Virus record (IMG/VR): IMGVR_UViG_3300050120_000230
Location: 62,001 to 126,000 of that record
Reading direction: 5' to 3' (one strand)
Length of the DNA: 64,000 nucleotides
Shown here: piece by piece, positions 1,759 to 60,101 of the stretch
Numbering within the stretch: position 1 is the stretch's first letter
Layout: each line of letters opens with the position of its first letter
The notes under the pieces: model-generated
Seen by the model: the letters and a program-made list of their open reading frames with translations, nothing else
Told to the model about the DNA's origin: nothing
Database searches by the model: none
Made by a program: the position numbers and the translations under genes

Positions 1759-1986
1759 TTAGACAATATCTTCGTGTAGGTCGCAGGTATTAAGTCGAGT
1801 AGTTGCTTTCAGGAAAGTGTGAAGGGCACACTTGCCCAATCCTGAAATAGATTTGTCTTCAGTTTCGCTGAAATGCACGCAGTCACCACAGCTTCCGGGG
1901 ATCACGCCGAAACGAATTGGGTTCTCGTGCTTGCGAAATCCAGCAAGCTTGCCCATGACAATGGAAGTATCGACTTGGACGGTCAT
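1759..1986 (-). CDS. small Cys-rich hypothetical protein
   Basis: CxxC...C...C pattern; start overlaps the upstream stop. Confidence 0.5.
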   Translation of the reverse strand: MTVQVDTSIVMGKLAGFRKHENPIRFGVIPGSCGDCVHFSETEDKSISGLGKCALHTFLKATTRLNTCDLHEDIV

Positions 1987-2471
1987 ATTTGGAACAGCTT
2001 GAACAGCATGGCTGCCTGTTCATCTTCGAAGGAGAACACAAGGAACGAATGCTTCGGGCGCTTGCGTCTGTCCGCGAAAAGTTTCAACGACCAACTGCCT
2101 CGGGTTTGGGTATGAATCCATTCCGAGATCGACGCGAAATCGTATTGTGCCGTGATTCGCTTCGAAATTACGTTCTTGAATTCCTGATCGGGAACGAACC
2201 GCGTGAGGCTTTCCGGCGAGCAATCCATGATGATTTTTAGGCGTTGGCGATGTTCCCACGAACGCCCGTCAACTTCTTCTGCGTCTGGCTCGGGTGCTTC
2301 GAGTTTCAGGATGTGACACGGAACTTCATACCGAAATCGATGTCCGAAATCGGTGGTCGTGAGAACGATGAATGTGCCCTCTTTCGCAAGTTCAAGAAGG
2401 GCTTCGTTGGTCAGTTCCTCATCAAGAGAAGACAAAGAATTCATCTCCCATGGCTTCCACGGTTTCACCAA
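1983..2471 (-). CDS. hypothetical protein of the FKxxW-like family
   Basis: C-terminus FSFEDEQAAMLFKL; exact start uncertain because it overlaps the end of the polymerase gene. Confidence 0.6.
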   Translation of the reverse strand: MVKPWKPWEMNSLSSLDEELTNEALLELAKEGTFIVLTTTDFGHRFRYEVPCHILKLEAPEPDAEEVDGRSWEHRQRLKIIMDCSPESLTRFVPDQEFKNVISKRITAQYDFASISEWIHTQTRGSWSLKLFADRRKRPKHSFLVFSFEDEQAAMLFKLFQI

Positions 2472-15751: not shown

Positions 15752-16015
15752 TCATTTTTCAATTTCCGGCAGGTTTAGTTTCAGAATGCGGACGTGGTCC
15801 ATCACTTCGTCCATGTTTTTCTGCATACCCTTGAGGACCGATTCGAGAGTAAGAAGTTCGAACTTCAGGAGTTCGTTGACTCCTCGCAGCGTGGCGCGAT
15901 CTGTTTTCAGATCGGCGATTTCTTGGTCTTTCTCAGCGAGCGCAGCTTCATGCTTGCGCTGAAGTCGAGTCAGAGGCGTATCAATCCTGTTCTGGGTCAC
16001 CTTGGCTCCATTCAC
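15752..16015 (-). CDS. coiled-coil hypothetical protein
   Basis: heptad pattern; overlapping gene string. Confidence 0.55.
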   Translation of the reverse strand: MNGAKVTQNRIDTPLTRLQRKHEAALAEKDQEIADLKTDRATLRGVNELLKFELLTLESVLKGMQKNMDEVMDHVRILKLNLPEIEK

Positions 16016-16394
16016 TCATTTGTGTTTTGAAATTGAACACATCAATCCAAGACGACAGGCCGATGAAAACGTGGCCATTCTCTCGCGGCCATAGTCGAGA
16101 TGCCCGCCATGGCCCGGTTAGATTGGCGTGACACCATTCACCGATTTCATCGACAAACTCGCAGGTTTCGAGAGTTCTGAATTCGGGATTGCTTGCACGA
16201 TCCTGCGTGCACATGCGAAGCCAAGTCTTGTAATTCAGATAGACGTATCCGGGCGGGATGGTGACCCGCAGCGAGAACGGCTCGATATGCGATAGGACCA
16301 GCGGCCCCTTCCGACGAAGCACAACCACAGGCTTGGGAGCCTTCGCCACCTTGGGCGGGAACTCATCGGAAGGGAGACGCCTGAACGGATGCAT
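15981..16394 (-). CDS. hypothetical protein (distant FKxxW-like family)
   Basis: IGEWCHANLTGPW...DVFNFK; TGATG coupling. Confidence 0.55.
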   Translation of the reverse strand: MHPFRRLPSDEFPPKVAKAPKPVVVLRRKGPLVLSHIEPFSLRVTIPPGYVYLNYKTWLRMCTQDRASNPEFRTLETCEFVDEIGEWCHANLTGPWRASRLWPRENGHVFIGLSSWIDVFNFKTQMSEWSQGDPEQD

Positions 16395-38538: not shown

Positions 38539-39894
38539 ATGGATGCTGTCTCGATCATTAATAGCCTCGCCGCCACAACCAAGCGCACCGAAAAAGAACA
38601 AATCCTCATGGGTGCGTTCATGGGTGGGCACCGTGAGTTTTTCATCGCGTCCCAGATGGCCTACGACATTCTGGTGACGTTCGGCGTCAAGAAGGTCGCC
38701 GAGATCGATGATGACGACGATAGTCCCGGCGAGTTCACGTTCGCCGATTTCCTCAGTCTGGCGGGGAAGCTCCGTCGCCGGGAACTCACCGGCCACGCTG
38801 CCCGCGACGCCATCCATGATGCGGCCGAACGCTGCCACATTCCCACTTGGAACACGTTCTATCGTCGGGTCCTTCTGAAGGATTTCCGCTGCGGTGTGGA
38901 CACTTCGACCATCAATCGGGTCCTGAAGAAACTATCGGACACCGAACCGGAAGCCCGGCAATTGATGATCCCGGTTTTCGACTGCCAGTTGGCACACGAC
39001 GGCGCCAAACCAGAACATCAGAAAAAGGTTTCCGGCACCAAGATGCTGGATATCAAACTCGATGGTGTCCGGCTGTTGACGATCCTCGATAAGGAAGAGG
39101 GCACGGTCACCCAATACACTCGCAACGGAAAGGTGAATGCCAACTTCACCGAAATTCGTGAAGGACTGGAAAGTCTGCTCACGACGTTGCCGGGGTCTAT
39201 CGTGCTCGATGGCGAAGTGATGTCGCTGAATTTCCAAGATTTGATGCGACAAGTGAACCGCCGAGAAGGCGTGGACACCAGTCAATCTCGTTTGGCAGTC
39301 TTTGATATCATCCCACTCAAGGATTTCCGTGCGGGTATCTGCAACATCCCCCAGTCCATGAGGCAGCACATTCTCGCCGATCTTGAACAGAGCGGCGATC
39401 TGAAGCAGCACACCAACGGGCTTGTCTACGTCATCCCGAAGGTGACCGTTGATTTGAACACGCCGGAAGGTCAACTAAGTTTCAAGGAGTTCAACAAGCA
39501 AGCCATAGCCGCCGGTTACGAGGGCATCATGGTCAAGGACCCTACCGCTCCCTATGAACTGAAACGCTCGTTCGCATGGTTGAAGATCAAGCCGTTCATT
39601 GAAGTCAGCTTGACCATCGTGGGCTACGAAGAAGGTTCGGGCAAATACGCCGGAATGCTCGGGGCTTGGGTCATGAAGGGCGAAGACGATGGAGTCGAGA
39701 TCGAAACCAACGTTGGCGGTGGGCTCAGCGATGCAGAACGCGTGGAATATTGGGAGAAGCGCGACAAACTGATCGGAATGATCGGCGAAGTTCGAGCCGA
39801 CGCCAAAACGCTGGAAGACGGCGGGACGGTTTATTCGCTTCGTTTCCCTCGCTGGAAGGGCTTCCGAGGCACCGTCCCCGGCGAAAAACTCTGA
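38539..39894 (+). CDS. ATP-dependent DNA ligase
   Basis: KLDGVR, LDGEV, FDII, EGIMVK, WLKIK, SLRFPR. Confidence 0.95.
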   Translation: MDAVSIINSLAATTKRTEKEQILMGAFMGGHREFFIASQMAYDILVTFGVKKVAEIDDDDDSPGEFTFADFLSLAGKLRRRELTGHAARDAIHDAAERCHIPTWNTFYRRVLLKDFRCGVDTSTINRVLKKLSDTEPEARQLMIPVFDCQLAHDGAKPEHQKKVSGTKMLDIKLDGVRLLTILDKEEGTVTQYTRNGKVNANFTEIREGLESLLTTLPGSIVLDGEVMSLNFQDLMRQVNRREGVDTSQSRLAVFDIIPLKDFRAGICNIPQSMRQHILADLEQSGDLKQHTNGLVYVIPKVTVDLNTPEGQLSFKEFNKQAIAAGYEGIMVKDPTAPYELKRSFAWLKIKPFIEVSLTIVGYEEGSGKYAGMLGAWVMKGEDDGVEIETNVGGGLSDAERVEYWEKRDKLIGMIGEVRADAKTLEDGGTVYSLRFPRWKGFRGTVPGEKL

Positions 39895-40286
39895 TGCTGG
39901 ATAGCTACACCGTTCCTATGGAGCGACATGGTCGAGCAAAGTTCAACGCTCGACATTCGCCCGACCGGTGTGAGTTCTACAACAGCGACGAACTCCGGCG
40001 GGCAGGCCATATCCAGTGGTCTCCCGCAAATCTTCGCGACAAAGAAATGCTCGGTGTGTTTCACACGATCCGAACGATAGACGAAATGTATGCTCTCGTC
40101 TCTCAACCGATCACGAGAGAAGTTCTGGAAGAGTCCATGGAGGCCGCGACAACGCTACTCCGCATGAACATGCACTTCGACGCATGGACCAGTATGGAAG
40201 TGTCTGACGGCGTTCAAAATAGGCTGGGATTTTTCTTTCGGCGCCGTGAAGACGCACTCATGTTTAAGATGGTGTGGCCGTCCTAA
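39894..40286 (+). CDS. hypothetical protein of the FKxxW family
   Basis: TGATG coupling to the ligase; ends FFFRRREDALMFKMVWPS. Confidence 0.65.
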   Translation: MLDSYTVPMERHGRAKFNARHSPDRCEFYNSDELRRAGHIQWSPANLRDKEMLGVFHTIRTIDEMYALVSQPITREVLEESMEAATTLLRMNMHFDAWTSMEVSDGVQNRLGFFFRRREDALMFKMVWPS

Positions 40287-45604: not shown

Positions 45605-45605
45605 A

Positions 45606-46079
45606 TCATTTCGGTTTCTTGAGGTTAGCAACAGCTATCGCTAAACTAGATGGGTGAAACTTGGGGACCGACAAAGTTAGCTTTGCCTTCTCATCAGCAG
45701 CAAGGAAGACATGATGACTTCCAAACAAATATTTCCCCACAGGATTGCTTCTGAAATGGCGATGCGTGGCCACTTCTAATACAACGATCTCATCGTCATA
45801 CTCGATGTAGTAAACCCTGATATCGTTGCTGTGGAGATCGGGCAGGATAGTCAGGTGCTTTAGACCATGATCCAGTCTCAAGAAATCTTTCGATGGATCG
45901 CTGTTTCCATATTGATAGATAGGAAGAGAGTTTGCGGTGGTTACGTTCTCACGCAACTCTGCTAACGCCAGTTTGATCTCGGTTTTGAAGCGAGTAAGCG
46001 ACTTGTCGATGTGGAAAGTTGTCGCGTGACGGAAACCAAGTTTCTTCTTCGCAATCGTTTCTGTAGTCTTACGCAGCAT
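45606..46079 (-). CDS. RelE/YafQ-like putative mRNA interferase
   Basis: basic protein; LKHLTILPD...RVYY...VLEVATHRHF resembles the YafQ C-terminal core. Confidence 0.5.
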   Translation of the reverse strand: MLRKTTETIAKKKLGFRHATTFHIDKSLTRFKTEIKLALAELRENVTTANSLPIYQYGNSDPSKDFLRLDHGLKHLTILPDLHSNDIRVYYIEYDDEIVVLEVATHRHFRSNPVGKYLFGSHHVFLAADEKAKLTLSVPKFHPSSLAIAVANLKKPK

Positions 46080-46119
46080 GATACGCGCATAGTCCTAGAA
46101 AATATACTCAGAGTCTATT

Positions 46120-46401
46120 TCAATCGAAATACTTATCCAAAAACGCACTATATTCACTAGGCGTCATGCTAGTAACATCTGTTCCACGATCCACATCAGC
46201 AATATTTGCTTTTGCAATAAGATCAGACACTTTTCTAGAAGAGTCGAATACCAAAGTATCTAGTATGGGAGTGAAATCGATTGGAATACTAAAGACACCA
46301 AACAAGTTTGAGGTGTCCGTTTGCGGCATAGAAAATTGCAGTTGGCCATCGAAGGCTAACGTGGAGGTCAAAAAATCCATAGGTGCCTTGGTAGTCTCCA
46401 T
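46120..46401 (-). CDS. small acidic protein, putative antitoxin
   Basis: directly upstream of the RelE-like gene; AT-rich; TAAATA at 46407-46412. Confidence 0.45.
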   Translation of the reverse strand: METTKAPMDFLTSTLAFDGQLQFSMPQTDTSNLFGVFSIPIDFTPILDTLVFDSSRKVSDLIAKANIADVDRGTDVTSMTPSEYSAFLDKYFD

Positions 46402-46441
46402 CTGAGTATTTATGCGCGCTATCGGATGATGTTGTCTATAA

Positions 46442-46470
46442 GAAAAGGCCCCGAGGTTCGGGGCCTTTTC
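46442..46470. terminator. bidirectional intrinsic terminator
   Basis: GAAAAGGCCCCGA-GGT-TCGGGGCCTTTTC. Confidence 0.85.
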
Positions 46471-46479
46471 CTAGTTCAT

Positions 46480-46710
46480 TTACTCGTCGTTGACGAAGAC
46501 GCCGGTGACTTTCACCGATACGATGGCCGTCAGTGGAATGTAGAGTCGGGGCGCCGTATCCGGCATGTTCGAGAAGATCAGCAGGCCGTTGTCCAGAACT
46601 TCGGCCATTCCAGCGCCGAGATAGGTAGTTCCATCCACGCACACGATGTCGTAGGTATCAGTGGGATTGTCTGAAGCATAAGTGCTCAGAGCCGTAGTAA
46701 CATTCGACAT
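46480..46710 (-). CDS. small hypothetical protein
   Basis: AAGGA RBS; bounded by hairpins. Confidence 0.6.
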   Translation of the reverse strand: MSNVTTALSTYASDNPTDTYDIVCVDGTTYLGAGMAEVLDNGLLIFSNMPDTAPRLYIPLTAIVSVKVTGVFVNDE

Positions 46711-49908: not shown

Positions 49909-50172
49909 GGGTAATAAGGACACCATCTCTGCCCTCAAAGGAGTTACGCGGCGAGCGCGTAGTCCATGCTAACGTTGTCGTTGGCATTTAGAAATGTGAA
50001 CTGATTGGCGGTCGTTTCTTACCGGGATTCTCGCAAACCTTTTACCGTCGCCAATCGAAAGCTGTTCGCCCCCGCACTTCCCGGTGACAACGCCGGAGAA
50101 AGATTGGTGGAGGCGCGGGGATTCGCACCCCGGTCTTGCCGACTTATTCTGATGTGGTCATCAAATCCAAGG
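49900..50172 (-). ncRNA. ssrA: circularly permuted (two-piece) tmRNA
   Basis: acceptor piece ends CGCCTCC-ACCA at 50105; coding piece starts GGGGGCG at 50073 (G3-U70 Ala identity); tag ANDNVSMDYALAA-stop at 49985-49944; outer ends approximate. Confidence 0.95.
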
Positions 50173-50188
50173 CTATTTAGCGATTTTT

Positions 50189-50428
50189 CTAGGGATAAGT
50201 CAAGCGATCTTCATCGCGGATGTGTGGATGTTTTTCCAACTCCACCAGAAGTTCGAAGATTTGTAGAACGACAAGCAGGCCATCCTTTGATCCGTCGTCG
50301 TATTGCCATTTCTTGTAGATGATCTCGCGCAGCGGATTGAGTATTTTCGCCGAAGCGTTAAGGCGGTGAAATTCGGCCTCGTCCTTGAACCCGTGACGTT
50401 GGACCATTTCTTCAATTCGATTTCTCAT
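50189..50428 (-). CDS. hypothetical protein
   Basis: start overlaps the serS stop. Confidence 0.55.
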
Positions 50429-51945
50429 AGTTTCTTCTTCTTAAAGATTTCGACCAGTCCATCGACGAAATCTTCCAAACGCCCTTCGTCAGAATACCCG
50501 CCGCACATGTTCGGCCCGTCAATCGCGTAGATCGCTTTCGCTTCCGGCGGATTCAGTTCGACCCGTTCCTCAATGCCAGCCGCTTCAAGCTTCGCGTTGA
50601 GGCGTTCGATGAATGCGTTCCGCTCGGCCGCCTCATCACCGCCAATGAGCCATCGGTCATCTCGATTCGCCGTTGGGCTGTTCATATAAGGACGAAGCGC
50701 CTCGGGGATGAGAATTGAGCCATCTTCCCGTTGGTAGGTTTCAAGGATAGCCACCAGCGCGCGCCCGACGGCCACGCCAGACCCGTTGAAGGTGTGGATG
50801 AACTTAGTGCCTTTGGTTTCCCCAGCCGGGCGATAGCGAGCGTTCATGCGGCGAGCTTGGAAATCGCCGCAGTAGGAAATGCTCGAAATCTCGCGGAAGG
50901 CATTCTGGCCGGGTAGCCACACTTCGATGTCGTAGGTTTTGGAGGCCGAGAACCCCATGTCCCCGACCGACAGAAGCATGACGCGATAGTGCAACCCCAG
51001 CGCCTTCAGCATGTGCTCGACACTGCCGAGCATTCGCTCGTGTTCCATTTCGTGAAGAGCCACTTCCTCGGACACGAGTGAGACGAGTTCGACCTTGTTG
51101 AACTGATGCTGCCGGATCATCCCTCGCGTGTCGCGCCCGGCCGAACCCGCTTCCGCACGGAAGCAGGGCGTCAGGGCACAATAGCGCCCGAGTTCACCCC
51201 AGTGTAGCACGCTGTCGCGCACCATGTTCGTCAGGGACACTTCCGCCGTTGGGATCAGATAGCGGCCGTCCGTTGTCTTGAAGAGGTCTTCTTCGAACTT
51301 GGGAAGCTGCCCGGTGCCGAACATCGACTCTTCGCGGACCAACAGCGGCGGCGCCACTTCGGTGTATCCGTTATTTTCCGTGTGGAAATCGAGCATGAAT
51401 TGCCCGAGCGCACGTTCTAGCCGGGCCATTTTCCCTTTCAGGAAAACGAAGCGCGCGCCAGACACCTTGGCTCCGGTCTCGAAATCCATGCCGAGGGGTT
51501 CACCGAGATCGAAGTGTTCTTTCGGTGTGAAAGAAAACGACGGTTTCACACCTTCACGGCGAATCTCAATGTTGTGATCCGCGTCGGGTCCGAGTGGCAC
51601 GCCCTTCATTGGCAAGTTCGGCAGGCGAGACAGATGGTGCATCACGACTCGATGGTCTTCTTCTACCTGCGGGGTGAGTTTTTCGATGTCGGCTTTGACG
51701 GTGACCATCTCGGCCTTCAACGCCTCCACGATCTCCATGGCGGCCTTGTCGCGCATCAACTGCCCGATCTCACCGGAGATCGCATTGCGACGCTGCTGAG
51801 CCTTCTCAAGAGCCTGTAGACCGTTCCTGTGCCGGGCATCCGCCATCAGCAACAGCTTGATGAGCGTTGGGCTTTCCAAGCGATAGTGCAGGCGGGAAAT
51901 AACCTCGCCTTGATTCTCGCGGATATAATTCAGGTCAAGCATCAA
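50425..51945 (-). CDS. serS: seryl-tRNA synthetase with C-terminal extension
   Basis: N-terminal coiled-coil arm, [49 protein letters not shown]. Confidence 0.95.
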
Positions 51946-51993
51946 ATGTCCTCGTCGCCATATCCATAATCAATAACATGCTTCGAGCATCGA

Positions 51994-52947
51994 TCAAGCA
52001 TCCTCCCCGATCCATTCTTGGTCATGCTCGACGTTTGTATCATAAATCGAGAACTCTGAAATGGTCTTCGGCACAACGAAACCGTCTCGTTCCAAGTTCT
52101 GAACCAATCCTTCGCACTCTGTTTTGAAAGCCTCGTAAGTGCCAACGTAGTTGCGCTTCGTAGCCATCATCACGAACTCCGTGGCCGAGATGCGTTTGAA
52201 CGCATTCCGAGATAGGTGGAAGTCGTAGGCGGCCTCGCGAGAACGAAGGTCGGCCAGCGTTTTATCGGTGACCACAATATTGAAGTGGGCTTCGAAGTAG
52301 CAATCCTTCGGCATGATCGGGTTTTTGTGCACCGCAGACGGCGCCGCCGGATGCCAAGGAACGGTCTCCACTTTCTCTCGCACGACCGTAAAGCCACCCG
52401 CCTTAAGGCTCTTCGAAATGCGTCGCACTTCGGTGATGGCGCTCGTGTTGTCGCCCATGTGCAGGCTCGACGTTTGCGTATCGAGCATGATCGTCTTACC
52501 CATGGTATTGTGCATATCGATCAGCAGCGGTTTCACCCCGATCATGGCACAAGCTCGTTTGAAATCTTCGAGCCGCTCGGCCGAATCAGTAACAAGGCCG
52601 CCCGCCACGGTGACGTGGATTTCGTAGGGCAGCGGATAGACGGCCTTACTTTCTCGCGTTTGGAGTTCTTCCCAGTATGCCGCCTTGCGGAACATCATGG
52701 ACTTGATGTCCTCGTGTCCGTAGTCGAGGTCATAGGCGACCGAGAGCGCGCAGAGGATCACATCGGCGACTTCTTCAAGAATGCGCTCTTTGGCCACGAA
52801 CCGATGAGTGGTGGAATGCGCTCCCTCATAAGGAAGCACCACTTTGGCCAGTTCTCCGACTTCTTCGGCGGTTTTCAGCGCCTTTTGCCCGAGAGTTTTC
52901 CTGTCGAGCGACGACAGCTTGGCGATATAGTCGAGAAGTTCGTCCAT
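51994..52947 (-). CDS. MazG-like NTP pyrophosphohydrolase fused to an uncharacterised domain
   Basis: KTAEEVGELA...EEVADV; C-terminal YEIHVTV...REKVE...YFEAH...SRN domain. Confidence 0.75.
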   Translation of the reverse strand: MDELLDYIAKLSSLDRKTLGQKALKTAEEVGELAKVVLPYEGAHSTTHRFVAKERILEEVADVILCALSVAYDLDYGHEDIKSMMFRKAAYWEELQTRESKAVYPLPYEIHVTVAGGLVTDSAERLEDFKRACAMIGVKPLLIDMHNTMGKTIMLDTQTSSLHMGDNTSAITEVRRISKSLKAGGFTVVREKVETVPWHPAAPSAVHKNPIMPKDCYFEAHFNIVVTDKTLADLRSREAAYDFHLSRNAFKRISATEFVMMATKRNYVGTYEAFKTECEGLVQNLERDGFVVPKTISEFSIYDTNVEHDQEWIGEDA

Positions 52948-53342
52948 CACATCCATCTCAATTTGAAAAGTACCGCGTCGTTTTCGCGCTCGAACCCGAT
53001 GCTCCAAGCATCGAGATAATCTACGTCGTTCGCCGCACAATGTTTGGCTTCGAGCAGATCAAACCAGAAGATTATTTCACATGCTCCAATGTGAAACTGA
53101 TCTACCCATTCCATGAAAGACACGGTCGGCCGCAGGAGAAACGGCCCAGACCACGGAGACGGATCGTCATCCAGTTTGGGTCGATTATCGACAGGGTGAC
53201 GCTCGTAGTTTTTGAGGGCGAACTCCGGCCATTCATTCAGCATGACTCTATGGGGTAGGCGCCCAGCCCAGCGATCTACCGGTTTCCAGTTGGCTGCACC
53301 GAGACCGATAGGGTTTATGGCTGACCGCTTCATCCGATCCAT
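52947..53342 (-). CDS. FKxRW-family hypothetical protein
   Basis: ends IGFERENDAVLFKLRWM. Confidence 0.7.
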   Translation of the reverse strand: MDRMKRSAINPIGLGAANWKPVDRWAGRLPHRVMLNEWPEFALKNYERHPVDNRPKLDDDPSPWSGPFLLRPTVSFMEWVDQFHIGACEIIFWFDLLEAKHCAANDVDYLDAWSIGFERENDAVLFKLRWM

Positions 53343-53536
53343 CGCATCTTGAACAGTACGGCATCTTCATCGTTTTCAAAACGAACTGTATGCCGGGAAG
53401 GAGGATGATCGGCGAAATGAAACTCGTGAGGTGCTCGCAGGTTGCTACGACACCATTTCTCGATTTCCGGCTTCAATCTGCCGCCGATATTATCGATGCA
53501 GTCAAGATTTTCAAATGAGACAGTTTTCGATGACAT
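53330..53536 (-). CDS. FKxRW-family hypothetical protein
   Basis: ends VRFENDEDAVLFKMRWIG. Confidence 0.7.
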   Translation of the reverse strand: MSSKTVSFENLDCIDNIGGRLKPEIEKWCRSNLRAPHEFHFADHPPSRHTVRFENDEDAVLFKMRWIG

Positions 53537-53781
53537 CACGACCATCTCATTTTGAAAACGATGAAATCTGCATCACGCCCAAACGCACAATGGTAGCCAT
53601 TGAACACGGCGCCATACTGCGTCAAGTCAGCATTGATGGTGTTTTTTTGTTGTGCCCTGATATTTTTCAGAGACACGCCAAGTGTTGGGTCATACGAGAT
53701 CATATTCAAATGATCTATGAAGTTCTGCCAAAATTTCGGACTGTCATGGTAGCCATTGATTTCGAGGATCATCCGATCCAT
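53536..53781 (-). CDS. FKxRW-family hypothetical protein
   Basis: ends AFGRDADFIVFKMRWS. Confidence 0.7.
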   Translation of the reverse strand: MDRMILEINGYHDSPKFWQNFIDHLNMISYDPTLGVSLKNIRAQQKNTINADLTQYGAVFNGYHCAFGRDADFIVFKMRWS

Positions 53782-54137
53782 CTCATTTTGAACATGACAG
53801 CATCGCGCACATCAGAAAATGAAATCTGCCATCTCTTGACGCCCAATGGCGCGTCTCGATCACCCAGCCATCCGTATCGTTCCATCATGTTTTTGAAACG
53901 CATACACAACGCTTTGTATTCCGCCTCGCCGTTTTGCACCGAATATGGTGAGACTTCGATTCGCCGAAGACGATAGTTTCCGCGAAGAGACCCGGCCCAT
54001 TCTTTGAACATTGGACTGATTACGACGGACCATCTGCCCGCAACGGTTTCTGATTTTTGGAAATCCCAAAGTATCTTGCTGATCGAACGGTCAAGCACGA
54101 CGACTTTGTGCTCTAGGTCCACCGAAGTTTCACCCAC
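53769..54137 (-). CDS. FKxRW-family hypothetical protein
   Basis: ends ISFSDVRDAVMFKMRWIG. Confidence 0.7.
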   Translation of the reverse strand: MGETSVDLEHKVVVLDRSISKILWDFQKSETVAGRWSVVISPMFKEWAGSLRGNYRLRRIEVSPYSVQNGEAEYKALCMRFKNMMERYGWLGDRDAPLGVKRWQISFSDVRDAVMFKMRWIG

Positions 54138-54424
54138 AACAGATGTTCCTCTGTTTGCACGACCACGATGATCCCAGATTTCGGACTTTCGAACAGCAGT
54201 TCGTAGTCAATACCATTGAGTTTGGCCCACTCATCAAACTCGGGCGTCGCCATAGGTTCGAGACCGTAAGAAAGGTTCAATGACCCGTGTTTTTTGATAT
54301 ATTCTTCGGCATCATCCGGCATTTTCGGCGAGATAATTTTGATCCCGGCGACGGCTGGATTGGCGACGAAATGAAACTCTTTGGCCATGGTAAATTCGTT
54401 TACCAGTTCCGACAGCACACGCAA
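54113..54424 (-). CDS. FKxRW-family hypothetical protein (divergent)
   Basis: ends TEEHLLWVKLRWT. Confidence 0.65.
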   Translation of the reverse strand: MRVLSELVNEFTMAKEFHFVANPAVAGIKIISPKMPDDAEEYIKKHGSLNLSYGLEPMATPEFDEWAKLNGIDYELLFESPKSGIIVVVQTEEHLLWVKLRWT

Positions 54425-54427
54425 GCA

Positions 54428-55168
54428 TTATACGATGGGTGGAATTGGATCGCCTAAGCCGCTGTTGCTCCCATCTATGGGAGGCGGGGGCGTAACGCTC
54501 GTGGGTATGGGGTTCAAGATGGCGAGCAGAGCATCGCTACCGGCGGCGCCGATGACGCCTTTGAACGAAATGTCCGAAAACATCTGCACGAGATGCAACG
54601 CATCTGAGTAGTTGTTGAGAGTCAATGCGCTTGCTGAATTGAAATTGTCTTGAGCCGTAATCGATGCAGGCACGGTAGATGGAATGGCCAATATCTGGGA
54701 CACTCTGTCTGCCAGCGCATCCATTGCATCGCCGATTGTCAAAATCGGCAAGCTCGATGGGATCAGGTTCGGATCGCCCAGATTATCGAGAATGTCTCCG
54801 CAAGAGTCGATGGCCGCCACGAAACTTCGAGCCGCGAATTCGGCACCGAATGCAGCAGATATGGATGCAGTATCGTCTAGGTTGCTGATAGACGAGAACA
54901 CCGCCATTCGTTCAACCAACGTCGGAAGATTGGCGGCGATGTAGGTGGACAACGCAGGCATGTTTGTCGGATCGAAATCGTCGAGCATCGTTTTGTAGCC
55001 CAACAAGGTTGTGGACTCGGCCGGAAAGGCACTGGCAGCCGATTGAAGATGAGCTTGAACGTTCGACACTTCCGTAGACGAATTGGCAAGGCGCGGAGCA
55101 AGTGTGGAATCGACGTGCGTGCCAGCTTGAAGCAGAGCGAAGACGGCTGTGACAGCGTCCGTCATCAT
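54428..55168 (-). CDS. hypothetical acidic helical protein
   Basis: ATGA coupling to the upstream peptidase gene. Confidence 0.6.
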   Translation of the reverse strand: MMTDAVTAVFALLQAGTHVDSTLAPRLANSSTEVSNVQAHLQSAASAFPAESTTLLGYKTMLDDFDPTNMPALSTYIAANLPTLVERMAVFSSISNLDDTASISAAFGAEFAARSFVAAIDSCGDILDNLGDPNLIPSSLPILTIGDAMDALADRVSQILAIPSTVPASITAQDNFNSASALTLNNYSDALHLVQMFSDISFKGVIGAAGSDALLAILNPIPTSVTPPPPIDGSNSGLGDPIPPIV

Positions 55169-56022
55169 GCGCTCCTTGGAAGGTTCGCGTGGTATGGAGA
55201 ACTGCCGGTCATCGTGTAACCGATTCGCAGAGAAGAGTTGCCACCGGTCTTACGATTGGCGATGTGCATCCAACCGGGACTGCTATCTCCTTGGAACTCA
55301 AGCAAGAATTGCGTGAACGGGATGTTTGCACTGTTGAGGATTTTCTTCGCAATCTGACGAAGATCGTCCCGGCCGATTCGCGTGCCACCGTTGAAGAAAT
55401 GCAAATCGACGGCTGAGCCGATGTTGTGATCGGAACCGTTCGTGTTGTTGCGAAAACCACTACCGATTTTGAAGGACAATCCACCGCCGTTGGCAGCCAG
55501 CCAATCCTTCAGAGGATCAATAGAGTTCGTCGCAAGGAACTTGAGATTGCAGATCACATCAGCCCGCGCCATGTTTTTGGCAGTGGTGTTGGGAATCGCG
55601 TGGGACAGTGAGGATTGATAGGTCGCGGATGAGAAATCAGCCACGGTGTAGTAGCGCGAGATTTTCGTGGAGTCCGGCGAACTATTGCTGAACTCACCGC
55701 AAGTCACGTCCTTGGATTGGGCATTTGGAGCCGAAACGTTGTCTGAACCGGGGTCTTCCGCATTGGCGGTGGTTGCCCGTTCGATAGCGTCGGCGGTGCC
55801 TTCTCCATATTTCTGAGCCAGATAGGCATGACGTTCCGCAGGGGTCATGTCTTCGGTTTCCATGGAGTTACCCTCGGTCACCAACACGTCTGGCGCCACA
55901 CCGCCGGGGCCGGAGCCCGCGCCGCCGCCATCGACAAAGTGAGAGGACGCGCCGGTGATGACCGAACCCGTCTTCCCATCGACTTTCACGATGCTCCCAA
56001 CTCTGGCGACGGCGAACGACAT
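55165..56022 (-). CDS. M15-like Zn peptidase with short PAAR-like N-terminus
   Basis: SGFR...SDHNIGSAVD...WMH; N-terminus VARVGS...GSVITGASSHFVDG. Confidence 0.7.
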   Translation of the reverse strand: MSFAVARVGSIVKVDGKTGSVITGASSHFVDGGGAGSGPGGVAPDVLVTEGNSMETEDMTPAERHAYLAQKYGEGTADAIERATTANAEDPGSDNVSAPNAQSKDVTCGEFSNSSPDSTKISRYYTVADFSSATYQSSLSHAIPNTTAKNMARADVICNLKFLATNSIDPLKDWLAANGGGLSFKIGSGFRNNTNGSDHNIGSAVDLHFFNGGTRIGRDDLRQIAKKILNSANIPFTQFLLEFQGDSSPGWMHIANRKTGGNSSLRIGYTMTGSSPYHANLPRSA

Positions 56023-56024
56023 GC

Positions 56025-56363
56025 TTAGACCTTCAGCAGGCCGCCGGTCGGAATATCGAGACCGGTGGTCATCTTCACGTATTGCGAGCCCACGTCAGCG
56101 CGGGGCTTGAAGGGATCGGTGACCAAGCGGTCCCGCACGATGCGAAACTTTGTCGTGCCCTCGTCCCCAGACAGCATGAACGGCAGGAAGCCAAGGCGAG
56201 CTTCGCTCGGGCCGACCATCTGCATTTGAACGATGACGGGTTTTGACACCGTAATCGAGCCGTCGTCTTGAGCAACCAGCTTAGCGATGACTTCTTCACC
56301 CGTCGAAAGACGGAAGCCGATGGTGTCGTTGACGGCGACGCCGTCTTTCTTCTCAATGAGCAT
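56025..56363 (-). CDS. small beta-rich (Sm-like pattern) phage protein
   Basis: FRLSTGEEVIAK...KP...QY.KMTTGL; GGAG RBS. Confidence 0.65.
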   Translation of the reverse strand: MLIEKKDGVAVNDTIGFRLSTGEEVIAKLVAQDDGSITVSKPVIVQMQMVGPSEARLGFLPFMLSGDEGTTKFRIVRDRLVTDPFKPRADVGSQYVKMTTGLDIPTGGLLKV

Positions 56364-56600
56364 TACTTCAAAATCTCCAAAAGGTTACTCAATATAGTCG
56401 AGTAGAGCGGCAAATCCTAATTTCATCGGAAAAAGTGCCACCATAATATTTAGGCATTCGATAAGCCACTGACACCCGTAGGTAAATAGAAGATTGCGGC
56501 GTTTGGTTCCAGTCGCGGTCATAAACTACGGTTCTATTGACCGCCTAGAATCACCGTCCGGCTAAATACTGAAAAGCCGATTTCTCGGAGGTCTTACTAA

Positions 56601-59543
56601 ATGGCTACACTCGTTTCACCGGGCGTCGATGTCGAAATCATTGACGAATCGTTCTATGGCGGCGCTGGTCCGGGCACCGTTCCGCTCGTCGTTTTCGCGA
56701 CCGCAGCGAACAAGGCATCTCCTTCGGGAACCGGAATTGCCCCCTATACCGCTCCTTCCCAAGCAGGAAAGCTCTTCCTTGCGACTTCGCAACGTGAGTT
56801 GATCCAGAACTTCGGCACCCCGAACTTCAAGACTGTTCAGGGCACCCCGGTTCATGGCTACGAACTGAACGAATACGGGCTGCACGCAGCCTATCAGTTC
56901 CTCGGTATCTCGAACCGCTGCTACGTTCTGCGCGCAGACATTGACATGTCTCAGCTTGAGGCATCTTCCACGGCTCCGGTCGCCCCGCCGCTTCCCGGCA
57001 CCTACTGGCTCGACCTGACCCAAACCCAATTCGGTATCTTCCAGTCGAACGGTAACCCGTCGTCTGGTCTGGCTTGGGAAACGCAACCGACGCTCGCCGC
57101 GACCGCTGGCAACATCACCACGACGATGGATGACGTGGACGTTCCGTCCGCTTCTTTCGGCGCGGATGGCCAATTCGCTGTCGTCGTCACCATGTCGAAC
57201 AATCTGATCTATGAAAAGCTGAACGGTGCATGGCTGCAAGTCGGTTCGACTGCTTGGGCCGCCGCGCGCCCGACAACGGTCACCGGCCGCTCGAACCCGA
57301 GCCTGATCGCCACGACCGACACCTTCGAGATCAATGGTCACACGGTTGCATTCGATCAGATTTGGGACGGCACCGCCTACACCATTCAAGGCACTGGCGC
57401 CCTTTCGGAAATCGTCACGAACATCAACGCTGCTGCTATCGCGAACATCGTCGCCACCGTCTCCGGCGCTGGCGCTCTGGTTATTCGCGAATCGGCTGGT
57501 GGGAACATCGTTCTCAGCGCCCTGAACGGCACCCCGCTGACCACGCTCGGTTTGGCTCCCGGCCTGACGGCTGGCGTCACCGTTGACCAAACCAACACTC
57601 CGCAATACCCGGCCAACCGTGCCGCAGGTTCGGTGTGGGTCAAGGGTAATCCGCCGAACCATGGTGCAAGCTGGAAAGTCAAGCTTTGGAACGCAACGGC
57701 TGGTGCATTCGTCACCGTCCCGGCTCCGTTCTACCCGTTCAACTCTATCCTGAGCGACGGCAACTCCTCGAAGGACCAAGCTGCTTCGGCCGCATTTGGC
57801 ACTATCGCAACCGGAACGATCTACGTCGGCTTCGACGCTTCCAACGGCACGCAACAACTGCGTCGTTGGAACGGCACTGGCTGGGAAAACCTGATCTATG
57901 AAGCAGGCACGATCCCGCCGACCAGCCCTCCGGCAGACGGCACTTTCTGGTATAACACCAACTTCCGCGCCGACATCATGTATGGCGATGGCAATCAGTG
58001 GCTCGGCTACGCTCGTAAGTTCACGGCAACCGATCCCGCTGGCGTTCTGATCTCGGGCTCCGCTCCGACGACCCAGTCTGACGGCACTGCTCTGGTTGAC
58101 AACGATCTGTGGATTGATTCCAGCGATCTCGAAAACTACCCGATGCTGTATCGCTACGATACGACGTTGGCCCGTTGGAACCTGATCGACAACACCGACC
58201 AAACCTCTCCGTTTGGTATCGTGTTCGCCGACGCTCGCTCGAACTCTGGCACGAACTACACCAACAACCCGCACCCCGGCACGTACAACTACGGTTCGGA
58301 ACTCTCGGTTGATATGGTGCTGTCGAACTTCCTCGAACCCGACGCGCCCGATGCACGCACCTACCCGGATGGTATGCTGCTGTTCAACACGCGTTATTCG
58401 ACGAACAATGTCAAGGAATGGAAGCCCCTCTACTTCGCGCAGGGCGGCTTTGATCCGAACACGAACTTCACCCAATCCACCTATCACAACAGCGGCAGCA
58501 ACGCGATCTTCCCGGTGCTCGGCACCACGGGTATCTGGGTCACGGCAAGCGGCAATGACGTTGACGGCACACCCTTCATGGGTCGCAAGGCCGTTCGCGT
58601 CCTGATCGTTCGCTCGCTCGAAGAGATGATTACTCTGAACGACGATATTCGTTCGGAACTTGTCTACTTCAACCTGCTCGCGGCTCCGGGTTACCCGGAA
58701 CTGATGAACGAGATGGTGACGTTGAACACCGATCAGAAGGAAGTTGCCTTCATCGTTGGTGACACTCCGATCCGTCTGACTCCCGGTGGCACCGATGTCA
58801 CTTCGTGGGCGAACAACGGTAAGAACGTTGCTTCCACTGGTGAAGACGGTCTCACCGTCGCCAACGAATACGTCGGCGTCTACTACCCGTGGGGTCTGAG
58901 CACCGATCTGAGCGGCAATGAAGTGATGATCCCGCCCAGCGCCATCGCGCTGAGCACTCTGGCCTACAACGACCAAGTTGCTTACCCGTGGTACGCCCCG
59001 GCTGGCTTCCGTCGTGGTCTCGTGACCAACGCTTCGTCGGTCGGTTACCTGACTTCGGAAGGCGAGTTCAAGCCCGTCATCCTGAACCCCGGTCAGCGCG
59101 ACGTTCTTTACACCAACAAGATCAACCCCATCGCCTACATTCCGGGCCGTGGTCTGGTGGTCTACGGTCAGAAGACGCTCAACGCGGATCAAACCGCACT
59201 CGACCGCGTCAACGTCGCCCGTCTTGCCAACTACTTGAAGTATAACCTTGACAACATCGTCAAGCCGTTCCTCTTCGAGCAGAACGATTCGCAAACTCGT
59301 GCTTCGGCTCAAGCAACCGTTTCAGGTTTCCTGAATGGTCTGGTTGGTCTGCAAGCCCTGTCTGACTACGCAGTGATCTGCGACGACTCGAACAACACTT
59401 CGAGCCGCATCGACGCGAACGAACTCTGGATCGACATCGCCATCAAGCCGCTGCACGCCATCGAGTTCATCTATATCCCGGTGCGTATTCTCAACACCGG
59501 CTCCGACCTTGCAACGGCCGTCTCACAGACAGTCTCCCTGTAA
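56601..59543 (+). CDS. contractile tail sheath protein (gp18-like)
   Basis: LVSPGV..EIIDES N-terminus; YYPW, PPS, WYAPAG.RRG, LYTNKINPI, YGQKT, DRVNVARL, FLFEQND; TAAATA at 56563-56568. Confidence 0.95.
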   Translation: MATLVSPGVDVEIIDESFYGGAGPGTVPLVVFATAANKASPSGTGIAPYTAPSQAGKLFLATSQRELIQNFGTPNFKTVQGTPVHGYELNEYGLHAAYQFLGISNRCYVLRADIDMSQLEASSTAPVAPPLPGTYWLDLTQTQFGIFQSNGNPSSGLAWETQPTLAATAGNITTTMDDVDVPSASFGADGQFAVVVTMSNNLIYEKLNGAWLQVGSTAWAAARPTTVTGRSNPSLIATTDTFEINGHTVAFDQIWDGTAYTIQGTGALSEIVTNINAAAIANIVATVSGAGALVIRESAGGNIVLSALNGTPLTTLGLAPGLTAGVTVDQTNTPQYPANRAAGSVWVKGNPPNHGASWKVKLWNATAGAFVTVPAPFYPFNSILSDGNSSKDQAASAAFGTIATGTIYVGFDASNGTQQLRRWNGTGWENLIYEAGTIPPTSPPADGTFWYNTNFRADIMYGDGNQWLGYARKFTATDPAGVLISGSAPTTQSDGTALVDNDLWIDSSDLENYPMLYRYDTTLARWNLIDNTDQTSPFGIVFADARSNSGTNYTNNPHPGTYNYGSELSVDMVLSNFLEPDAPDARTYPDGMLLFNTRYSTNNVKEWKPLYFAQGGFDPNTNFTQSTYHNSGSNAIFPVLGTTGIWVTASGNDVDGTPFMGRKAVRVLIVRSLEEMITLNDDIRSELVYFNLLAAPGYPELMNEMVTLNTDQKEVAFIVGDTPIRLTPGGTDVTSWANNGKNVASTGEDGLTVANEYVGVYYPWGLSTDLSGNEVMIPPSAIALSTLAYNDQVAYPWYAPAGFRRGLVTNASSVGYLTSEGEFKPVILNPGQRDVLYTNKINPIAYIPGRGLVVYGQKTLNADQTALDRVNVARLANYLKYNLDNIVKPFLFEQNDSQTRASAQATVSGFLNGLVGLQALSDYAVICDDSNNTSSRIDANELWIDIAIKPLHAIEFIYIPVRILNTGSDLATAVSQTVSL

Positions 59544-59600: not shown

Positions 59601-59794
59601 TAGGGATTGAAATCCCACAGCTTCATCGCCCAGTTGGTGCCGTCCGTGGCGACGTGCCAAACTTGGATGAATCCAGCCTCGGGCTTGGCGAAATGTTCGC
59701 GAAACGCGGTGGCGGCTTCGGCTCGGGTGGCAACGTCACGTTCACCGGCTGACGTTGTGATGCGATAAGCGTCTTCGCTCTTTTGCTCAGCCAT
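59600..59794 (-). CDS. hypothetical protein
   Basis: AGGAG RBS. Confidence 0.55.
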   Translation of the reverse strand: MAEQKSEDAYRITTSAGERDVATRAEAATAFREHFAKPEAGFIQVWHVATDGTNWAMKLWDFNP

Positions 59795-60101
59795 TCGAAA
59801 CTCCTATGATTGATACGTCTCTAGAGTAATGTTCCAAGGGCAGGAACGATACCACGGTTTGACTACGTTTGTCCCACCGATATCCAACAAGTTGACCTTG
59901 GATTTCGATTATTCCCTCACGATGCTTGGTGGAGTGGTAGAAAACACGTTTGTTTTGTATACGGGCTAGCACATCCGAGACATCATCATCGGACAACATC
60001 AGTCCGTATCGTTCCATCAAACGAACATGGGCGTGTTGTGTAATGCGGCTCATTTTCCGTTGGCCCGCCGAGTCTCCCACGCAGCGCGGCGGCGCTTCCA
60101 A
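59787..60101 (-). CDS. hypothetical protein
   Basis: ITQHAHVRLMERYG motif; true start probably the downstream ATG near 60053. Confidence 0.55.
   Translation of the reverse strand: MEAPPRCVGDSAGQRKMSRITQHAHVRLMERYGLMLSDDDVSDVLARIQNKRVFYHSTKHREGIIEIQGQLVGYRWDKRSQTVVSFLPLEHYSRDVSIIGVSNG

What the first reader, a model, noticed from the sequence alone, without database searches (positions are those of the whole stretch)
52947..54424. Tandem array of five translationally coupled paralogs with variable N-termini and a fixed F-x4-D-A-x-x-F-K-x-R-W tail
Seen: five overlapping ORFs end in DAVLFKLRWM, DAVLFKMRWIG, DFIVFKMRWS, DAVMFKMRWIG and HLLWVKLRWT, with otherwise dissimilar sequences. Two junctions reuse the same DNA, ATGGATCGGATGA (53330-53342 and 53769-53781), which encodes W-I-G-stop and the next M-D-R-M start. 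Dispersed relatives occur at 1983, 15981, 23329 and 39894, including right after the polymerase and ligase genes. Inference: an expanding family with a shared docking module and diversified specificity regions, where the conserved junction may serve as a recombination point for cassette shuffling.
Basis: partly seen in the sequence, partly recalled or inferred. Interest (0 to 1): 0.7.

Follow-up and report, generated by a model that had tools for sequence, protein, structure and literature searches.

The report
Eighty-copy small-protein family in a jumbo phage
The five overlapping genes are real members of an unnamed family of small single-domain proteins that fills about one gene in eight of this 415-kb peat phage, recurs about 50 times in a cultured Sinorhizobium jumbo phage, and has no known function.

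Summary
Five stop/start-overlapping minus-strand ORFs at 52947-54424 end in the described tail. The fifth (54113-54424) is a divergent member.

The conserved part is more than a tail. A second motif (P...l..ev..W-C-x-x-N) lies 30-45 residues upstream. AlphaFold2 models (pLDDT 82 and 88) give one ~65-residue beta-alpha-beta-beta-alpha domain, a generic RRM/KH/ACT-like sandwich.

A profile finds 80 copies in the 415-kb genome (about 12% of genes) with no reversed-sequence decoys. It also finds 2,589 clusters among 1.84 billion public proteins and 51 ORFs in Sinorhizobium phage Phosso. Microvirga and Sphingobium genomes carry 1-5 copies, beside integrases where the context was examined.

Pfam, PHROGs, NCBIfam, PADLOC and PDB sequences do not name the family.

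Paralogues are old and divergent, so the arrays are not recent duplications. A close relative lacks exactly ORF3, which is flanked by a 15-nt direct repeat unique in the genome. That fits cassette gain or loss at the motif-coding tail. There is no genome-wide signal of recombination between tails.

Function is inferred only. The most likely reading is a diversified binder repertoire for host takeover or counter-defence. A shared docking partner was not tested.

The parts
54113..54424 (-). ORF1, a divergent family member (TTG start at 54424, or ATG at 54391 giving 92 aa). Tail EEHLLWVKLRWT.
   Evidence: The HMMs do not detect it. hhalign against A2 gives 88%, E 3.4e-6 over 46 columns. The AF2 model has pLDDT 88 with a C-terminal b-a-b-b-a unit. 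An ortholog is present in L024.
53769..54137 (-). ORF2, a family member of 122 aa (GTG start). Tail DAVMFKMRWIG.
   Evidence: E 6.5e-10. Its L024 ortholog is 49% identical.
53536..53781 (-). ORF3, a family member of 81 aa (78 aa from the ATGA-overlap ATG at 53772). Tail DFIVFKMRWS. It is the one gene absent from the close relative L024.
   Evidence: E 6.6e-7. Only the last 21 residues align to the family profile. The one-gene gap is in alignment A3.
53330..53545 (-). ORF4, the most canonical member, 71 aa (68 aa from the TGATG-overlap ATG at 53536). It has both the W-C-R-S-N helix and the DAVLFKMRWIG tail.
   Evidence: E 7.7e-11. AF2 model md8e394bb0b68 has pLDDT 82: b1 8-12, a1 26-35, b2 40-44, b3 51-56, a2 59-70.
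52947..53342 (-). ORF5, a family member of 131 aa (128 aa from the ATGA-overlap ATG at 53333) with an N-terminal extension. Tail DAVLFKLRWM.
   Evidence: E 1.1e-7. Outside this genome, one 90%-identity cluster (seen on 2 contigs, longest 52,004 bp) was found, 80% identical. The ortholog in L024 is likewise 80% identical.
53769..53781 (-). Junction ATGGATCGGATGA. It encodes W-I-G-stop of ORF2 overlapping the start of ORF3.
   Evidence: Only two copies exist in the genome.
53330..53342 (-). Junction ATGGATCGGATGA. It encodes W-I-G-stop of ORF4 overlapping the start of ORF5.
   Evidence: TGGATCGGATGA is also present at both corresponding L024 junctions.
53778..53792 (-). Direct repeat TTCAAAATGAGATGG (F-K-M-R-W codons of ORF2), on the upstream side of the ORF3 cassette.
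   Evidence: It is one of only two copies in the genome.
53542..53556 (-). Direct repeat TTCAAAATGAGATGG (F-K-M-R-W codons of ORF3), at the downstream end of the ORF3 cassette.
51994..52956 (-). MazG-like pyrophosphatase gene, translationally coupled to ORF5. It is a neighbour, not a family member.
   Evidence: phrog_1247, E 2.2e-38. TGATG overlap.
1983..2471 (-). Dispersed family member directly downstream of the DNA polymerase gene (2422-5223).
   Evidence: E 8.4e-6. Polymerase identified.
39894..40286 (+). Dispersed family member starting on the last base of the stop codon of the ATP-dependent DNA ligase gene (38539-39894).
   Evidence: E 3.1e-7. Ligase identified.
15981..16394 (-). Divergent dispersed member. 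The W-C-H-A-N-L helix is intact and the tail is degenerate (DVFNFKTQ).
   Evidence: hhalign 96.4%, E 1.3e-9 over 52 columns.

Best explanation
The array is one of 17 tandem clusters of a hyper-expanded family of small proteins. About 80 copies lie in the 415 kb held, roughly one gene in eight.

All members are built on one ~65-residue beta-alpha-beta-beta-alpha domain. The conserved residues sit in helix 1 (W-C-x-x-N), strand 3 (h-x-F) and the last helix (D-A-x-x-F-K-[LM]-[RF]-W), and probably hold the fold together. The loops, the open sheet face and the N-terminal extensions differ freely between copies.

The family belongs to T4-superfamily jumbo phages of the Atu_ph07/Phosso lineage, to other large phages, and to integrative elements of Alphaproteobacteria.

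Shown: the family, its copy number, its fold class, protein-level rather than DNA-level conservation, tight stop/start overlaps, one whole-gene presence/absence at a repeat-flanked junction, and fast repertoire turnover.

Inferred: each copy binds a different host or defence target on a common scaffold, making a diversified host-takeover or counter-defence repertoire. Arrays gain and lose single-gene cassettes, sometimes by recombination between the short motif-coding repeats.
For: Family and copy number:
- HMM counts with zero decoys.
- 2,589 public clusters at E<=1e-3.
- 51 ORFs in Phosso.
- Arrays in unrelated-GC phage contigs.

Domain:
- Second conserved motif.
- AF2 models with pLDDT 82 and 88 share the same unit.

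Protein-level selection:
- Synonymous codons vary at D, A, K and L.
- The TTC bias before K is genome-wide.

Scaffold with variable surface:
- The conserved strand-3 residues are i and i+2, on one face, and the other face is variable.
- pI spreads from 4 to 10.

Conflict-type evolution:
- Orthologs in L024 are 49-63% identical against 85% for MazG.
- Only 17 mostly weak reciprocal pairs link this genome with Phosso.
- The family is absent from four other huge phages that share MazG.
- It is sporadic in bacteria, and beside integrases and a DUF3987 primase-like gene in the two loci examined.

Cassette turnover:
- One-gene indel flanked by a unique 15-nt repeat.
Against: - There is no functional evidence of any kind: no named homologue, no fused known domain apart from one capsid-protein fragment, and no expression data.
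- The last helix is hydrophobic or conserved at almost every position, and K is invariant. That could mean a shared contact surface rather than only a core. This was not testable without model coordinates.
- The array sits between a lysin-like gene and MazG, with no promoter signal of its own, so an 'early takeover' timing is not indicated.
- Genome-wide, tails show no excess synonymous identity between neighbours.
- Other small-gene indels nearby need no family junction.
Confidence: 0.35

Rival explanations
1. The proteins are adaptors with a common docking module. The conserved C-terminal strand-helix, ending 1-2 residues after the W, contacts one shared hub. Candidates are a phage or host protease/unfoldase such as the phage ClpP system, RNA polymerase, or another family member. 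The variable part selects the cargo.
For: - K is invariant, and nearly the whole last helix is conserved or hydrophobic in 80 paralogues and 107 homologues.
- 50 of 74 members end 1-2 residues after the W.
- The genome encodes a ClpP directly followed by a weak family-like ORF.
- A relative is reported to encode six Clp proteins (PMC11242549).
Against: - The motif is predicted to be an integral strand plus helix of a folded domain with high confidence, not a free tail.
- The same i, i+3/4, i+7 pattern is what a buried helix face needs.
- The homodimer prediction gave no answer.
- No partner is known.
Confidence: 0.2
2. The proteins are RNA- or single-stranded-DNA-binding regulators with an RRM/KH-like fold. 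They act on transcripts of the genes they are coupled to, such as the polymerase, ligase and MazG genes.
For: - The best structural neighbours are RRM and KH domains: Foldseek UPF3B RRM at E 0.048, TM 0.46, and VIA-align KH/RRM/ACT at Z 5.1-5.7.
- The strand-3/helix-2 spacing resembles RNP1 plus helix 2 of RRMs (own comparison with the Pfam RRM_1 consensus, from memory).
- The genes are tightly coupled to upstream genes.
Against: - All structural matches are in the range the tools call a common arrangement.
- There is no Pfam RRM or KH hit.
- The fourth strand is missing.
- No conserved aromatic or basic residues lie on the open sheet face.
- Most members are acidic, with median pI 5.3-6.1.
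- The closest hit, the UPF3 RRM-like domain, was solved in complex with a protein partner (the UPF2 MIF4GIII domain) in the matched PDB entries.
Confidence: 0.15
3. The proteins are virion-packaged or injected proteins whose conserved motif is a capsid- or tail-targeting signal. This would be analogous to the polymorphic internal-protein (ip) genes of T-even phages, which share a short capsid-targeting sequence.
For: - The array lies among tail-sheath, tail-tube and lysin-like genes.
- One member is fused to a 45-residue piece of the T4 gp23 capsid protein.
- The ip locus is a precedent for a conserved signal joined to variable bodies in tandem (own knowledge).
Against: - The motif is C-terminal and part of a fold. 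The T4 signal is N-terminal and cleaved.
- Eighty different cargo proteins is implausible.
- The family also occurs in small integrase-bearing elements of bacteria, with no T4-type capsid gene among the neighbours examined.
- The family is absent from other T4-type huge phages.
Confidence: 0.1
4. The genes are selfish or neutral filler cassettes. The conserved tail persists because it supplies reinitiation context and microhomology that let the cassette insert behind essential genes, with no benefit to the phage.
For: - Members sit directly behind the polymerase and ligase genes, and a weak family-like ORF follows ClpP.
- Stop/start overlaps are twice as common as for other genes, 39% against 20%.
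- ORF3 is flanked by repeats.
Against: - Conservation is at the amino-acid level with free synonymous change.
- A confident fold and a second motif far from the junction exist.
- No nuclease or recombinase is associated with the cassettes.
- Orthologs are kept intact between diverged relatives.
Confidence: 0.1

Closest known systems
Lineage-specific expansions of small domains in jumbo phages, for example the ~35-copy zinc-ribbon family of Bacillus phage G (Iyer et al. 2021, PMC7824862)
   Same: One small domain is multiplied many times within a single very large phage genome, its function is unknown, and it is thought to serve regulation or conflict.
   Different: The domain is a different fold (alpha/beta, no metal ligands). 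The copy number is more than twice the one that paper calls unprecedented. The family is shared with a cultured rhizobiophage, thousands of metagenomic clusters and bacterial integrative elements.
PeSL cassettes of T4-type phages: promoter-early/stem-loop motifs that flank small novel ORFs and mediate modular shuffling (PMC2839356, PMC4122927)
   Same: Both occur in T4-superfamily genomes, where single small ORFs are gained or lost between close relatives at short repeated sequences at gene boundaries.
   Different: Here the repeat is coding sequence (the F-K-M-R-W codons and the stop/start overlap), not an intergenic promoter-terminator. No promoter- or terminator-like excess is found in the array. 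Only one indel supports the idea, and there is no genome-wide signal.
RRM / KH / ACT-type two-layer alpha/beta sandwiches (ferredoxin-like)
   Same: The order of elements is b-a-b-b-a, and the spacing of the hydrophobic strand-3 residues and the D-A start of helix 2 is similar. These are the best fold-search neighbours.
   Different: The fourth strand is missing, there are no RNP1/RNP2 or GXXG motifs, and there is no profile hit. The scores (E 0.05, TM 0.46, Z<=5.7) show only a common arrangement.
Polymorphic internal-protein (ip) locus of T-even phages, with a conserved capsid-targeting sequence on unrelated bodies (own knowledge, not checked here)
   Same: Tandem genes in T4-type phages share a short conserved end and otherwise dissimilar sequence, and differ between close relatives.
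   Different: The ip signal is N-terminal, about 10 residues long and cleaved. Here the conserved part is C-terminal, structured, and accompanied by a second motif.

Membership tests
RRM (Pfam PF00076 and clan) | Significant match to an RRM profile | tested here: not met
   No Pfam hit at E<=1 for the window members. None of the 107 homologues matches an RRM family at E<=0.1.
RRM (Pfam PF00076 and clan) | Four-stranded b-a-b-b-a-b fold | tested here: not met
   The models end with helix 2 and have no fourth strand. 50 of 74 members stop 1-2 residues after the helix.
RRM (Pfam PF00076 and clan) | Conserved RNP1/RNP2 aromatic and basic residues on the exposed sheet face | tested here: not met
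   Only alternate strand-3 residues (h-x-F, one face) are conserved, and the intervening positions vary freely. Which face is buried was inferred, not measured.
KH domain | b-a-a-b-b-a (type I) order with a GXXG loop between the two helices | tested here: not met
   There is a single helix before strand 2 and no conserved GXXG in the alignments. The KH matches have Z<=5.7.
PeSL-type mobile regulatory cassettes of T4-type phages | Intergenic early promoter plus stem-loop terminator flanking the variable ORF | tested here: not met
   Genes overlap with no intergenic space. There are 2 promoter-like sites against 4.5 expected, and 10 terminator-like sites against 7.3 expected, across the 7-kb stretch scanned (50000-57000), so neither is enriched.
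PeSL-type mobile regulatory cassettes of T4-type phages | Single-ORF insertion or deletion between close relatives, bounded by a short repeat | tested here: met
   ORF3 is absent from L024. It is flanked by a 15-nt perfect direct repeat unique in the genome.
T-even internal proteins (capsid-targeting sequence family) | N-terminal ~10-residue targeting sequence ending in a prohead-protease site | tested here: not met
   The conserved motif is C-terminal, and the N-termini are unrelated.
Known anti-phage defence components (PADLOC) | Match to a PADLOC model | tested here: not met
   0 of 40 members match at E<=0.01.
Lineage-specific expansion in a jumbo phage | Many paralogues of one domain within one phage genome, statistically supported | tested here: met
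   80 ORFs at E<=0.01 with 0 decoys, out of about 650 genes. There are 51 ORFs in Phosso.
Any named protein family (Pfam, PHROGs, NCBIfam, PDB sequences) | Profile or sequence match | tested here: not met
   Only scattered single weak hits were seen (phrog_7840 at E 0.0012-0.075).

The most novel reading that the evidence does not exclude
The family is a previously unrecognised, very large class of phage and mobile-element scaffold proteins. A jumbo phage would carry a library of 50-100 fast-evolving binders on one tiny fold. Each binder would neutralise or redirect a different host or defence component, possibly by handing it through the invariant C-terminal helix to a common hub such as the phage Clp protease. 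This would be a bacteriophage counterpart of the multigene immune-evasion families of large eukaryotic viruses.
Probability: 0.25. Interest if true: 0.85.

Novelty: new variant of a known kind. Interest (0 to 1): 0.62.

Why it matters
About one gene in eight of a half-megabase phage belongs to a single family that no database names. The family also makes up about 50 'hypothetical proteins' of a cultured Sinorhizobium jumbo phage and at least 2,589 protein clusters in public metagenomes.

Defining it turns a large block of phage 'dark matter' into one testable object. Phosso and S. meliloti offer a laboratory system for that work.

If the copies prove to be target-specific binders or counter-defence factors, this would be the largest such repertoire known in a phage. 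It would also help explain what very large phage genomes spend their extra coding capacity on.

If the family proves to be a neutral hitch-hiking cassette, it would still be a clear case of coding-sequence microhomology shaping gene arrays.

Tried and rejected
- Megablast of 15 kb against GenBank phages found no match. tblastn of ORF4 and of P0019 against phages found nothing useful.
- phrog_7840 as a possible named relative gave only one weak 21-residue hit in the genome and rings in control genomes, so it was dropped.
- The 570-kb NCBI relative (JAWVHG010000015.1) could not be searched whole because the record is not held. It was not found in genome contigs.
- The homodimer prediction returned 'no answer' and is not used as evidence.
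- dN/dS between the window and L024 could not be used because synonymous sites are saturated.
- The search for fused known domains in long members and long homologues found none, apart from one Gp23 fragment.
- No sigma-70 promoter or terminator enrichment was found in two arrays.
- No Rfam family matches in 51500-56500.
- No RNA sequencing run was listed for the array.
- DNA-level conservation of the tail, such as a hidden RNA or DNA element, is rejected. Synonymous codons vary, and the TTC bias is genome-wide.
- Recent tandem duplication is rejected, because best paralogues are distant and rarely adjacent.
- The ORF at 23329 is rejected as a relative.
- The Methylotenera hits of the DNA pattern scan are not confirmed by the HMM.
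Full report
**1. The observation**

The window is bases 62001-126000 of a 415,409-bp viral contig. CheckV estimates it at 72% complete, and G+C is 55%. It comes from a peat metagenome.

The five minus-strand ORFs are present exactly as described, with the quoted tails.

| ORF | Coordinates | Length (longest start) | Tail |
|---|---|---|---|
| ORF1 | 54113-54424 | 103 aa | HLLWVKLRWT |
| ORF2 | 53769-54137 | 122 aa | DAVMFKMRWIG |
| ORF3 | 53536-53781 | 81 aa | DFIVFKMRWS |
| ORF4 | 53330-53545 | 71 aa | DAVLFKMRWIG |
| ORF5 | 52947-53342 | 131 aa | DAVLFKLRWM |

Each stop overlaps a possible start of the next gene.

| Junction | Overlap |
|---|---|
| ORF1 to ORF2 | GTG start, 10 nt before the end of the stop |
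| ORF2 to ORF3 | ATGA |
| ORF3 to ORF4 | TGATG |
| ORF4 to ORF5 | ATGA |
| ORF5 to MazG-like gene | TGATG |

The MazG-like gene matches phrog_1247 at E 2e-38. Translational coupling is inferred from these overlaps and was not measured.

The 13-mer ATGGATCGGATGA lies at both quoted positions and nowhere else in the genome. It reads W-I-G-stop with an ATGA overlap. The public gene call for ORF5 uses the second ATG, giving 128 aa. TGGATCGGATGA is also present at both corresponding junctions of a diverged relative. The identity is therefore explained by the shared protein ending plus the overlap.

**2.

An HMM of the last ~30 residues finds 70 stop-to-stop ORFs in the whole genome at E<=0.01. It finds 82 at E<=1. 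No reversed-sequence decoy scores at E<=1.

An HMM of the last ~70 residues finds 80 ORFs at E<=0.01, with no decoy at E<=0.1. A rough gene count is about 650, so the family is about 12% of the genes.

The 80 members form 51 clusters: 34 singletons, 12 pairs, two triplets, two quadruplets and one run of eight at 272.8-275.1 kb.

| Position | Result | Context |
|---|---|---|
| 1983 | Confirmed, E 8e-6 | Directly follows the DNA polymerase |
| 39894 | Confirmed, E 3e-7 | Directly follows the ATP-dependent ligase |
| 15981 | Divergent member, hhalign 96% | - |
| 23329 | Not supported, hhalign 12% | - |

ORF1 of the array is missed by the HMMs. It aligns to the family profile over 46 columns (88%, E 3e-6).

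**3. What the conserved part is**

Aligning the members shows a second conserved block 30-45 residues before the tail. The pattern is P...l..ev..W-C-x-x-N..g.w, followed by a variable stretch, then f-x-F-x-d-e-x-D-A-l-l-F-K-m-r-W.

AlphaFold2 with 40 paralogues as the alignment gives ORF4 a mean pLDDT of 82. Its elements are strand 8-12, helix 26-35, strands 40-44 and 51-56, and helix 59-70.

ORF1, modelled with 100 family sequences, has pLDDT 88. It shows the same b-a-b-b-a unit at its C-terminus after an extra b-b-a. That alignment was fitted to the family, which biases the model toward the family fold.

The 'tail' is therefore strand 3 plus the final helix of a ~65-residue domain.

Synonymous codons vary freely at the conserved D, A, K and L positions. 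The near-exclusive TTC before K is a genome-wide habit: TTC-AAR occurs 212 times against 10 for TTT-AAR, and TTTAAA is absent from the genome. Selection is therefore on the protein.

**4. Fold comparisons**

- Foldseek against the PDB gives RRM domains at best, with UPF3B at E 0.048 and TM 0.46.
- VIA-align gives KH, ACT and RRM domains at Z 5.1-5.7. The tool itself calls that range a common arrangement.
- In AlphaFold DB, BFVD and the ESM Atlas, the nearest models are uncharacterised proteins of Pseudomonadota and of tailed phages, two of them from Agrobacterium phage Atu_ph07. TM-scores are 0.6-0.76, and RRMs come next.

The family has no fourth strand and no RNP or GXXG motifs. The conserved strand-3 residues alternate, so they lie on one face, and the other face is variable. 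pI ranges from 4 to 10 with a median near 6.

I therefore describe it as a generic ferredoxin-like two-layer sandwich and not as an RRM.

**5. Databases and literature**

The following give no name:
- Pfam
- PHROGs
- NCBIfam
- PADLOC
- PDB sequences

A full-text search for the motif strings found nothing relevant.

A profile search of 1.84 billion cluster representatives gives 2,589 proteins at E<=1e-3. Some carry two or three copies of the domain. Of ten of the top hits looked up, five carry a source name, and each is 'hypothetical protein'.

**6. Who carries it**

- By DNA polymerase, the nearest cultured phages are Sinorhizobium phage Phosso (469 kb) and Agrobacterium phage Atu_ph07 (490 kb), both at 52% identity.
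- Phosso has 48 matches by the genome search and 51 ORFs by my HMM. Many lie in runs of overlapping small genes, and in the 9-kb stretch checked all but one of the CDSs are annotated hypothetical. Atu_ph07 has only three weak matches.
- Arrays of five members, and of nine genes carrying ten domains, occur in phage contigs of 48% and 37% G+C. One of these contigs also carries T4 gp13/gp15-type genes.
- Four other huge phages (306-508 kb) that share the MazG-like gene have none.
- A degenerate DNA pattern scan of one genome per prokaryotic species, checked with the HMM, found true members in four Microvirga species and a Sphingobium MAG.
- The four of these genomes searched whole hold 1-5 copies each. 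The Sphingobium MAG has four in tandem.
- In the two loci examined (the Sphingobium MAG and M. aerilata), the members sit beside tyrosine integrases. In the Sphingobium locus they also lie near a DUF3987 primase-like gene.
- None was found in 200 other genomes sampled from the same order at E<=1e-4.

The family is therefore cargo of large phages and of integrative elements, mainly of Alphaproteobacteria.

**7. How the arrays evolve**

- Paralogues are old. The best within-genome hit has a median of 32 bits and 35% identity, and only 6 of 70 best hits are within 2 kb. Arrays are not recent tandem duplicates.
- Between this genome and Phosso there are only 17 reciprocal best pairs, most of them weak.
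- The close relative L024 (a 52-kb contig) is collinear with the window at 67-86% nucleotide identity. It has orthologs of ORF1, 2, 4 and 5. These are 55, 49, 63 and 80% identical, against 85% for MazG.
- L024 lacks ORF3 as a clean ~239-nt gap that starts right after TGGATCGGATGA.
- In the window, ORF3 is flanked by a perfect 15-nt direct repeat, TTCAAAATGAGATGG, at 53778-53792 and 53542-53556. These are the only two copies in the genome.

That is the signature expected for gain or loss of a one-gene cassette by recombination between the motif-coding tails.

Three limits apply. It is one event, and its direction is unknown. At least two other small-gene indels in the same 21 kb involve no family member. 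Across the genome, adjacent members do not share synonymous codons in their tails more than non-adjacent ones (0.571 against 0.537; 382 of 2000 random sets reach the adjacent value).

**8. Function**

Nothing here measures function. No promoter or terminator excess, no Rfam family and no listed RNA run bear on expression. The homodimer prediction returned no answer.

I rank the readings by four features:
- a conserved scaffold with free surfaces
- fast turnover
- a wide spread of charge
- presence in unrelated kinds of mobile element but not in host cores

The ranking:

| Reading | Confidence |
|---|---|
| Diversified binder repertoire for host takeover or counter-defence | ~0.35 |
| Common docking module on a shared hub | ~0.2 |
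| RNA/ssDNA-binding regulators | ~0.15 |
| Packaged or injected proteins | ~0.1 |
| Neutral hitch-hiking cassettes | ~0.1 |

For the docking-module reading, the invariant K, the almost fully conserved last helix and the fixed distance to the C-terminus remain unexplained. The genome also has a ClpP.

**9. Novelty**

Lineage-specific expansions in jumbo phages are a known phenomenon. Iyer et al. called a ~35-copy zinc ribbon in phage G unprecedented (PMC7824862).

This family is unnamed and has more than twice that copy number. It is widespread in metagenomes and is present in a cultured phage. The genome paper on the related phage AP-J-162 does not mention paralogue families (PMC11242549).

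I rate it a new variant of a known kind, with moderate-to-high interest.

Noticed in passing
whole genome G000:C1 (window included): The hexamer TTTAAA (DraI/AhaIII site) occurs 0 times in 415,409 bp, against about 50 expected from base composition. F-K codon pairs are TTC-AAR 212 times and TTT-AAR 10 times. This looks like restriction-site avoidance.
   Followed up: partly
G000:C1:252032-252610 (-) = L013:13035-13547: One family member carries its domain in the N-terminal half. It is followed by a ~45-residue segment matching positions 3-45 of Pfam Gp23 (T4 major capsid protein) at E 7.5e-18. A separate 252-aa gp23-like fragment lies at G000:C1:396617-397375. This is either a chimeric ORF or split capsid-gene pieces.
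   Followed up: partly
G000:C1:406512-407051 (+) and 407076-407471 (+): The phage encodes a ClpP protease (E 1.6e-78). It is directly followed by a weak family-like ORF (E 0.016), as also happens behind the polymerase and ligase genes.
   Followed up: no
window 55165-56022 (-) and 54428-55168 (-): The gene upstream of the array has a weak endolysin hit (phrog_894, E 2e-4). By eye I read an SDHNIGSAVDLHF motif in it as M15-peptidase-like. It is followed by a 246-aa ORF with no family hit. Both diverge from the tail-sheath gene at 56601-59543, so the array sits in a tail/lysis neighbourhood.
   Followed up: partly
window 45597-46531 and 59604-60059, compared with L024: Two further small-gene indels separate the window from its close relative within 21 kb: about 950 nt extra in the window and about 850 nt extra in L024. 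Neither involves the family.
   Followed up: no
window 50425-51945 (-): A 506-aa protein matches phrog_16140 (E 3e-142) and has a weaker histidyl-tRNA-synthetase-like match.
   Followed up: no
L071 1949-3863 (Sphingobium MAG contig JBPPMC010000261.1): Four family members lie in tandem inside what looks like a small integrative element, between a DUF3987 primase-like gene and a tyrosine integrase with an Arm DNA-binding domain.
   Followed up: partly
window 53766-53779 (+): The ORF2/ORF3 junction forms a small inverted repeat, GGATC-ATCC-GATCC, around the stop/start overlap. The ORF4/ORF5 junction does not. The terminator scan listed it, but it is probably incidental.
   Followed up: no
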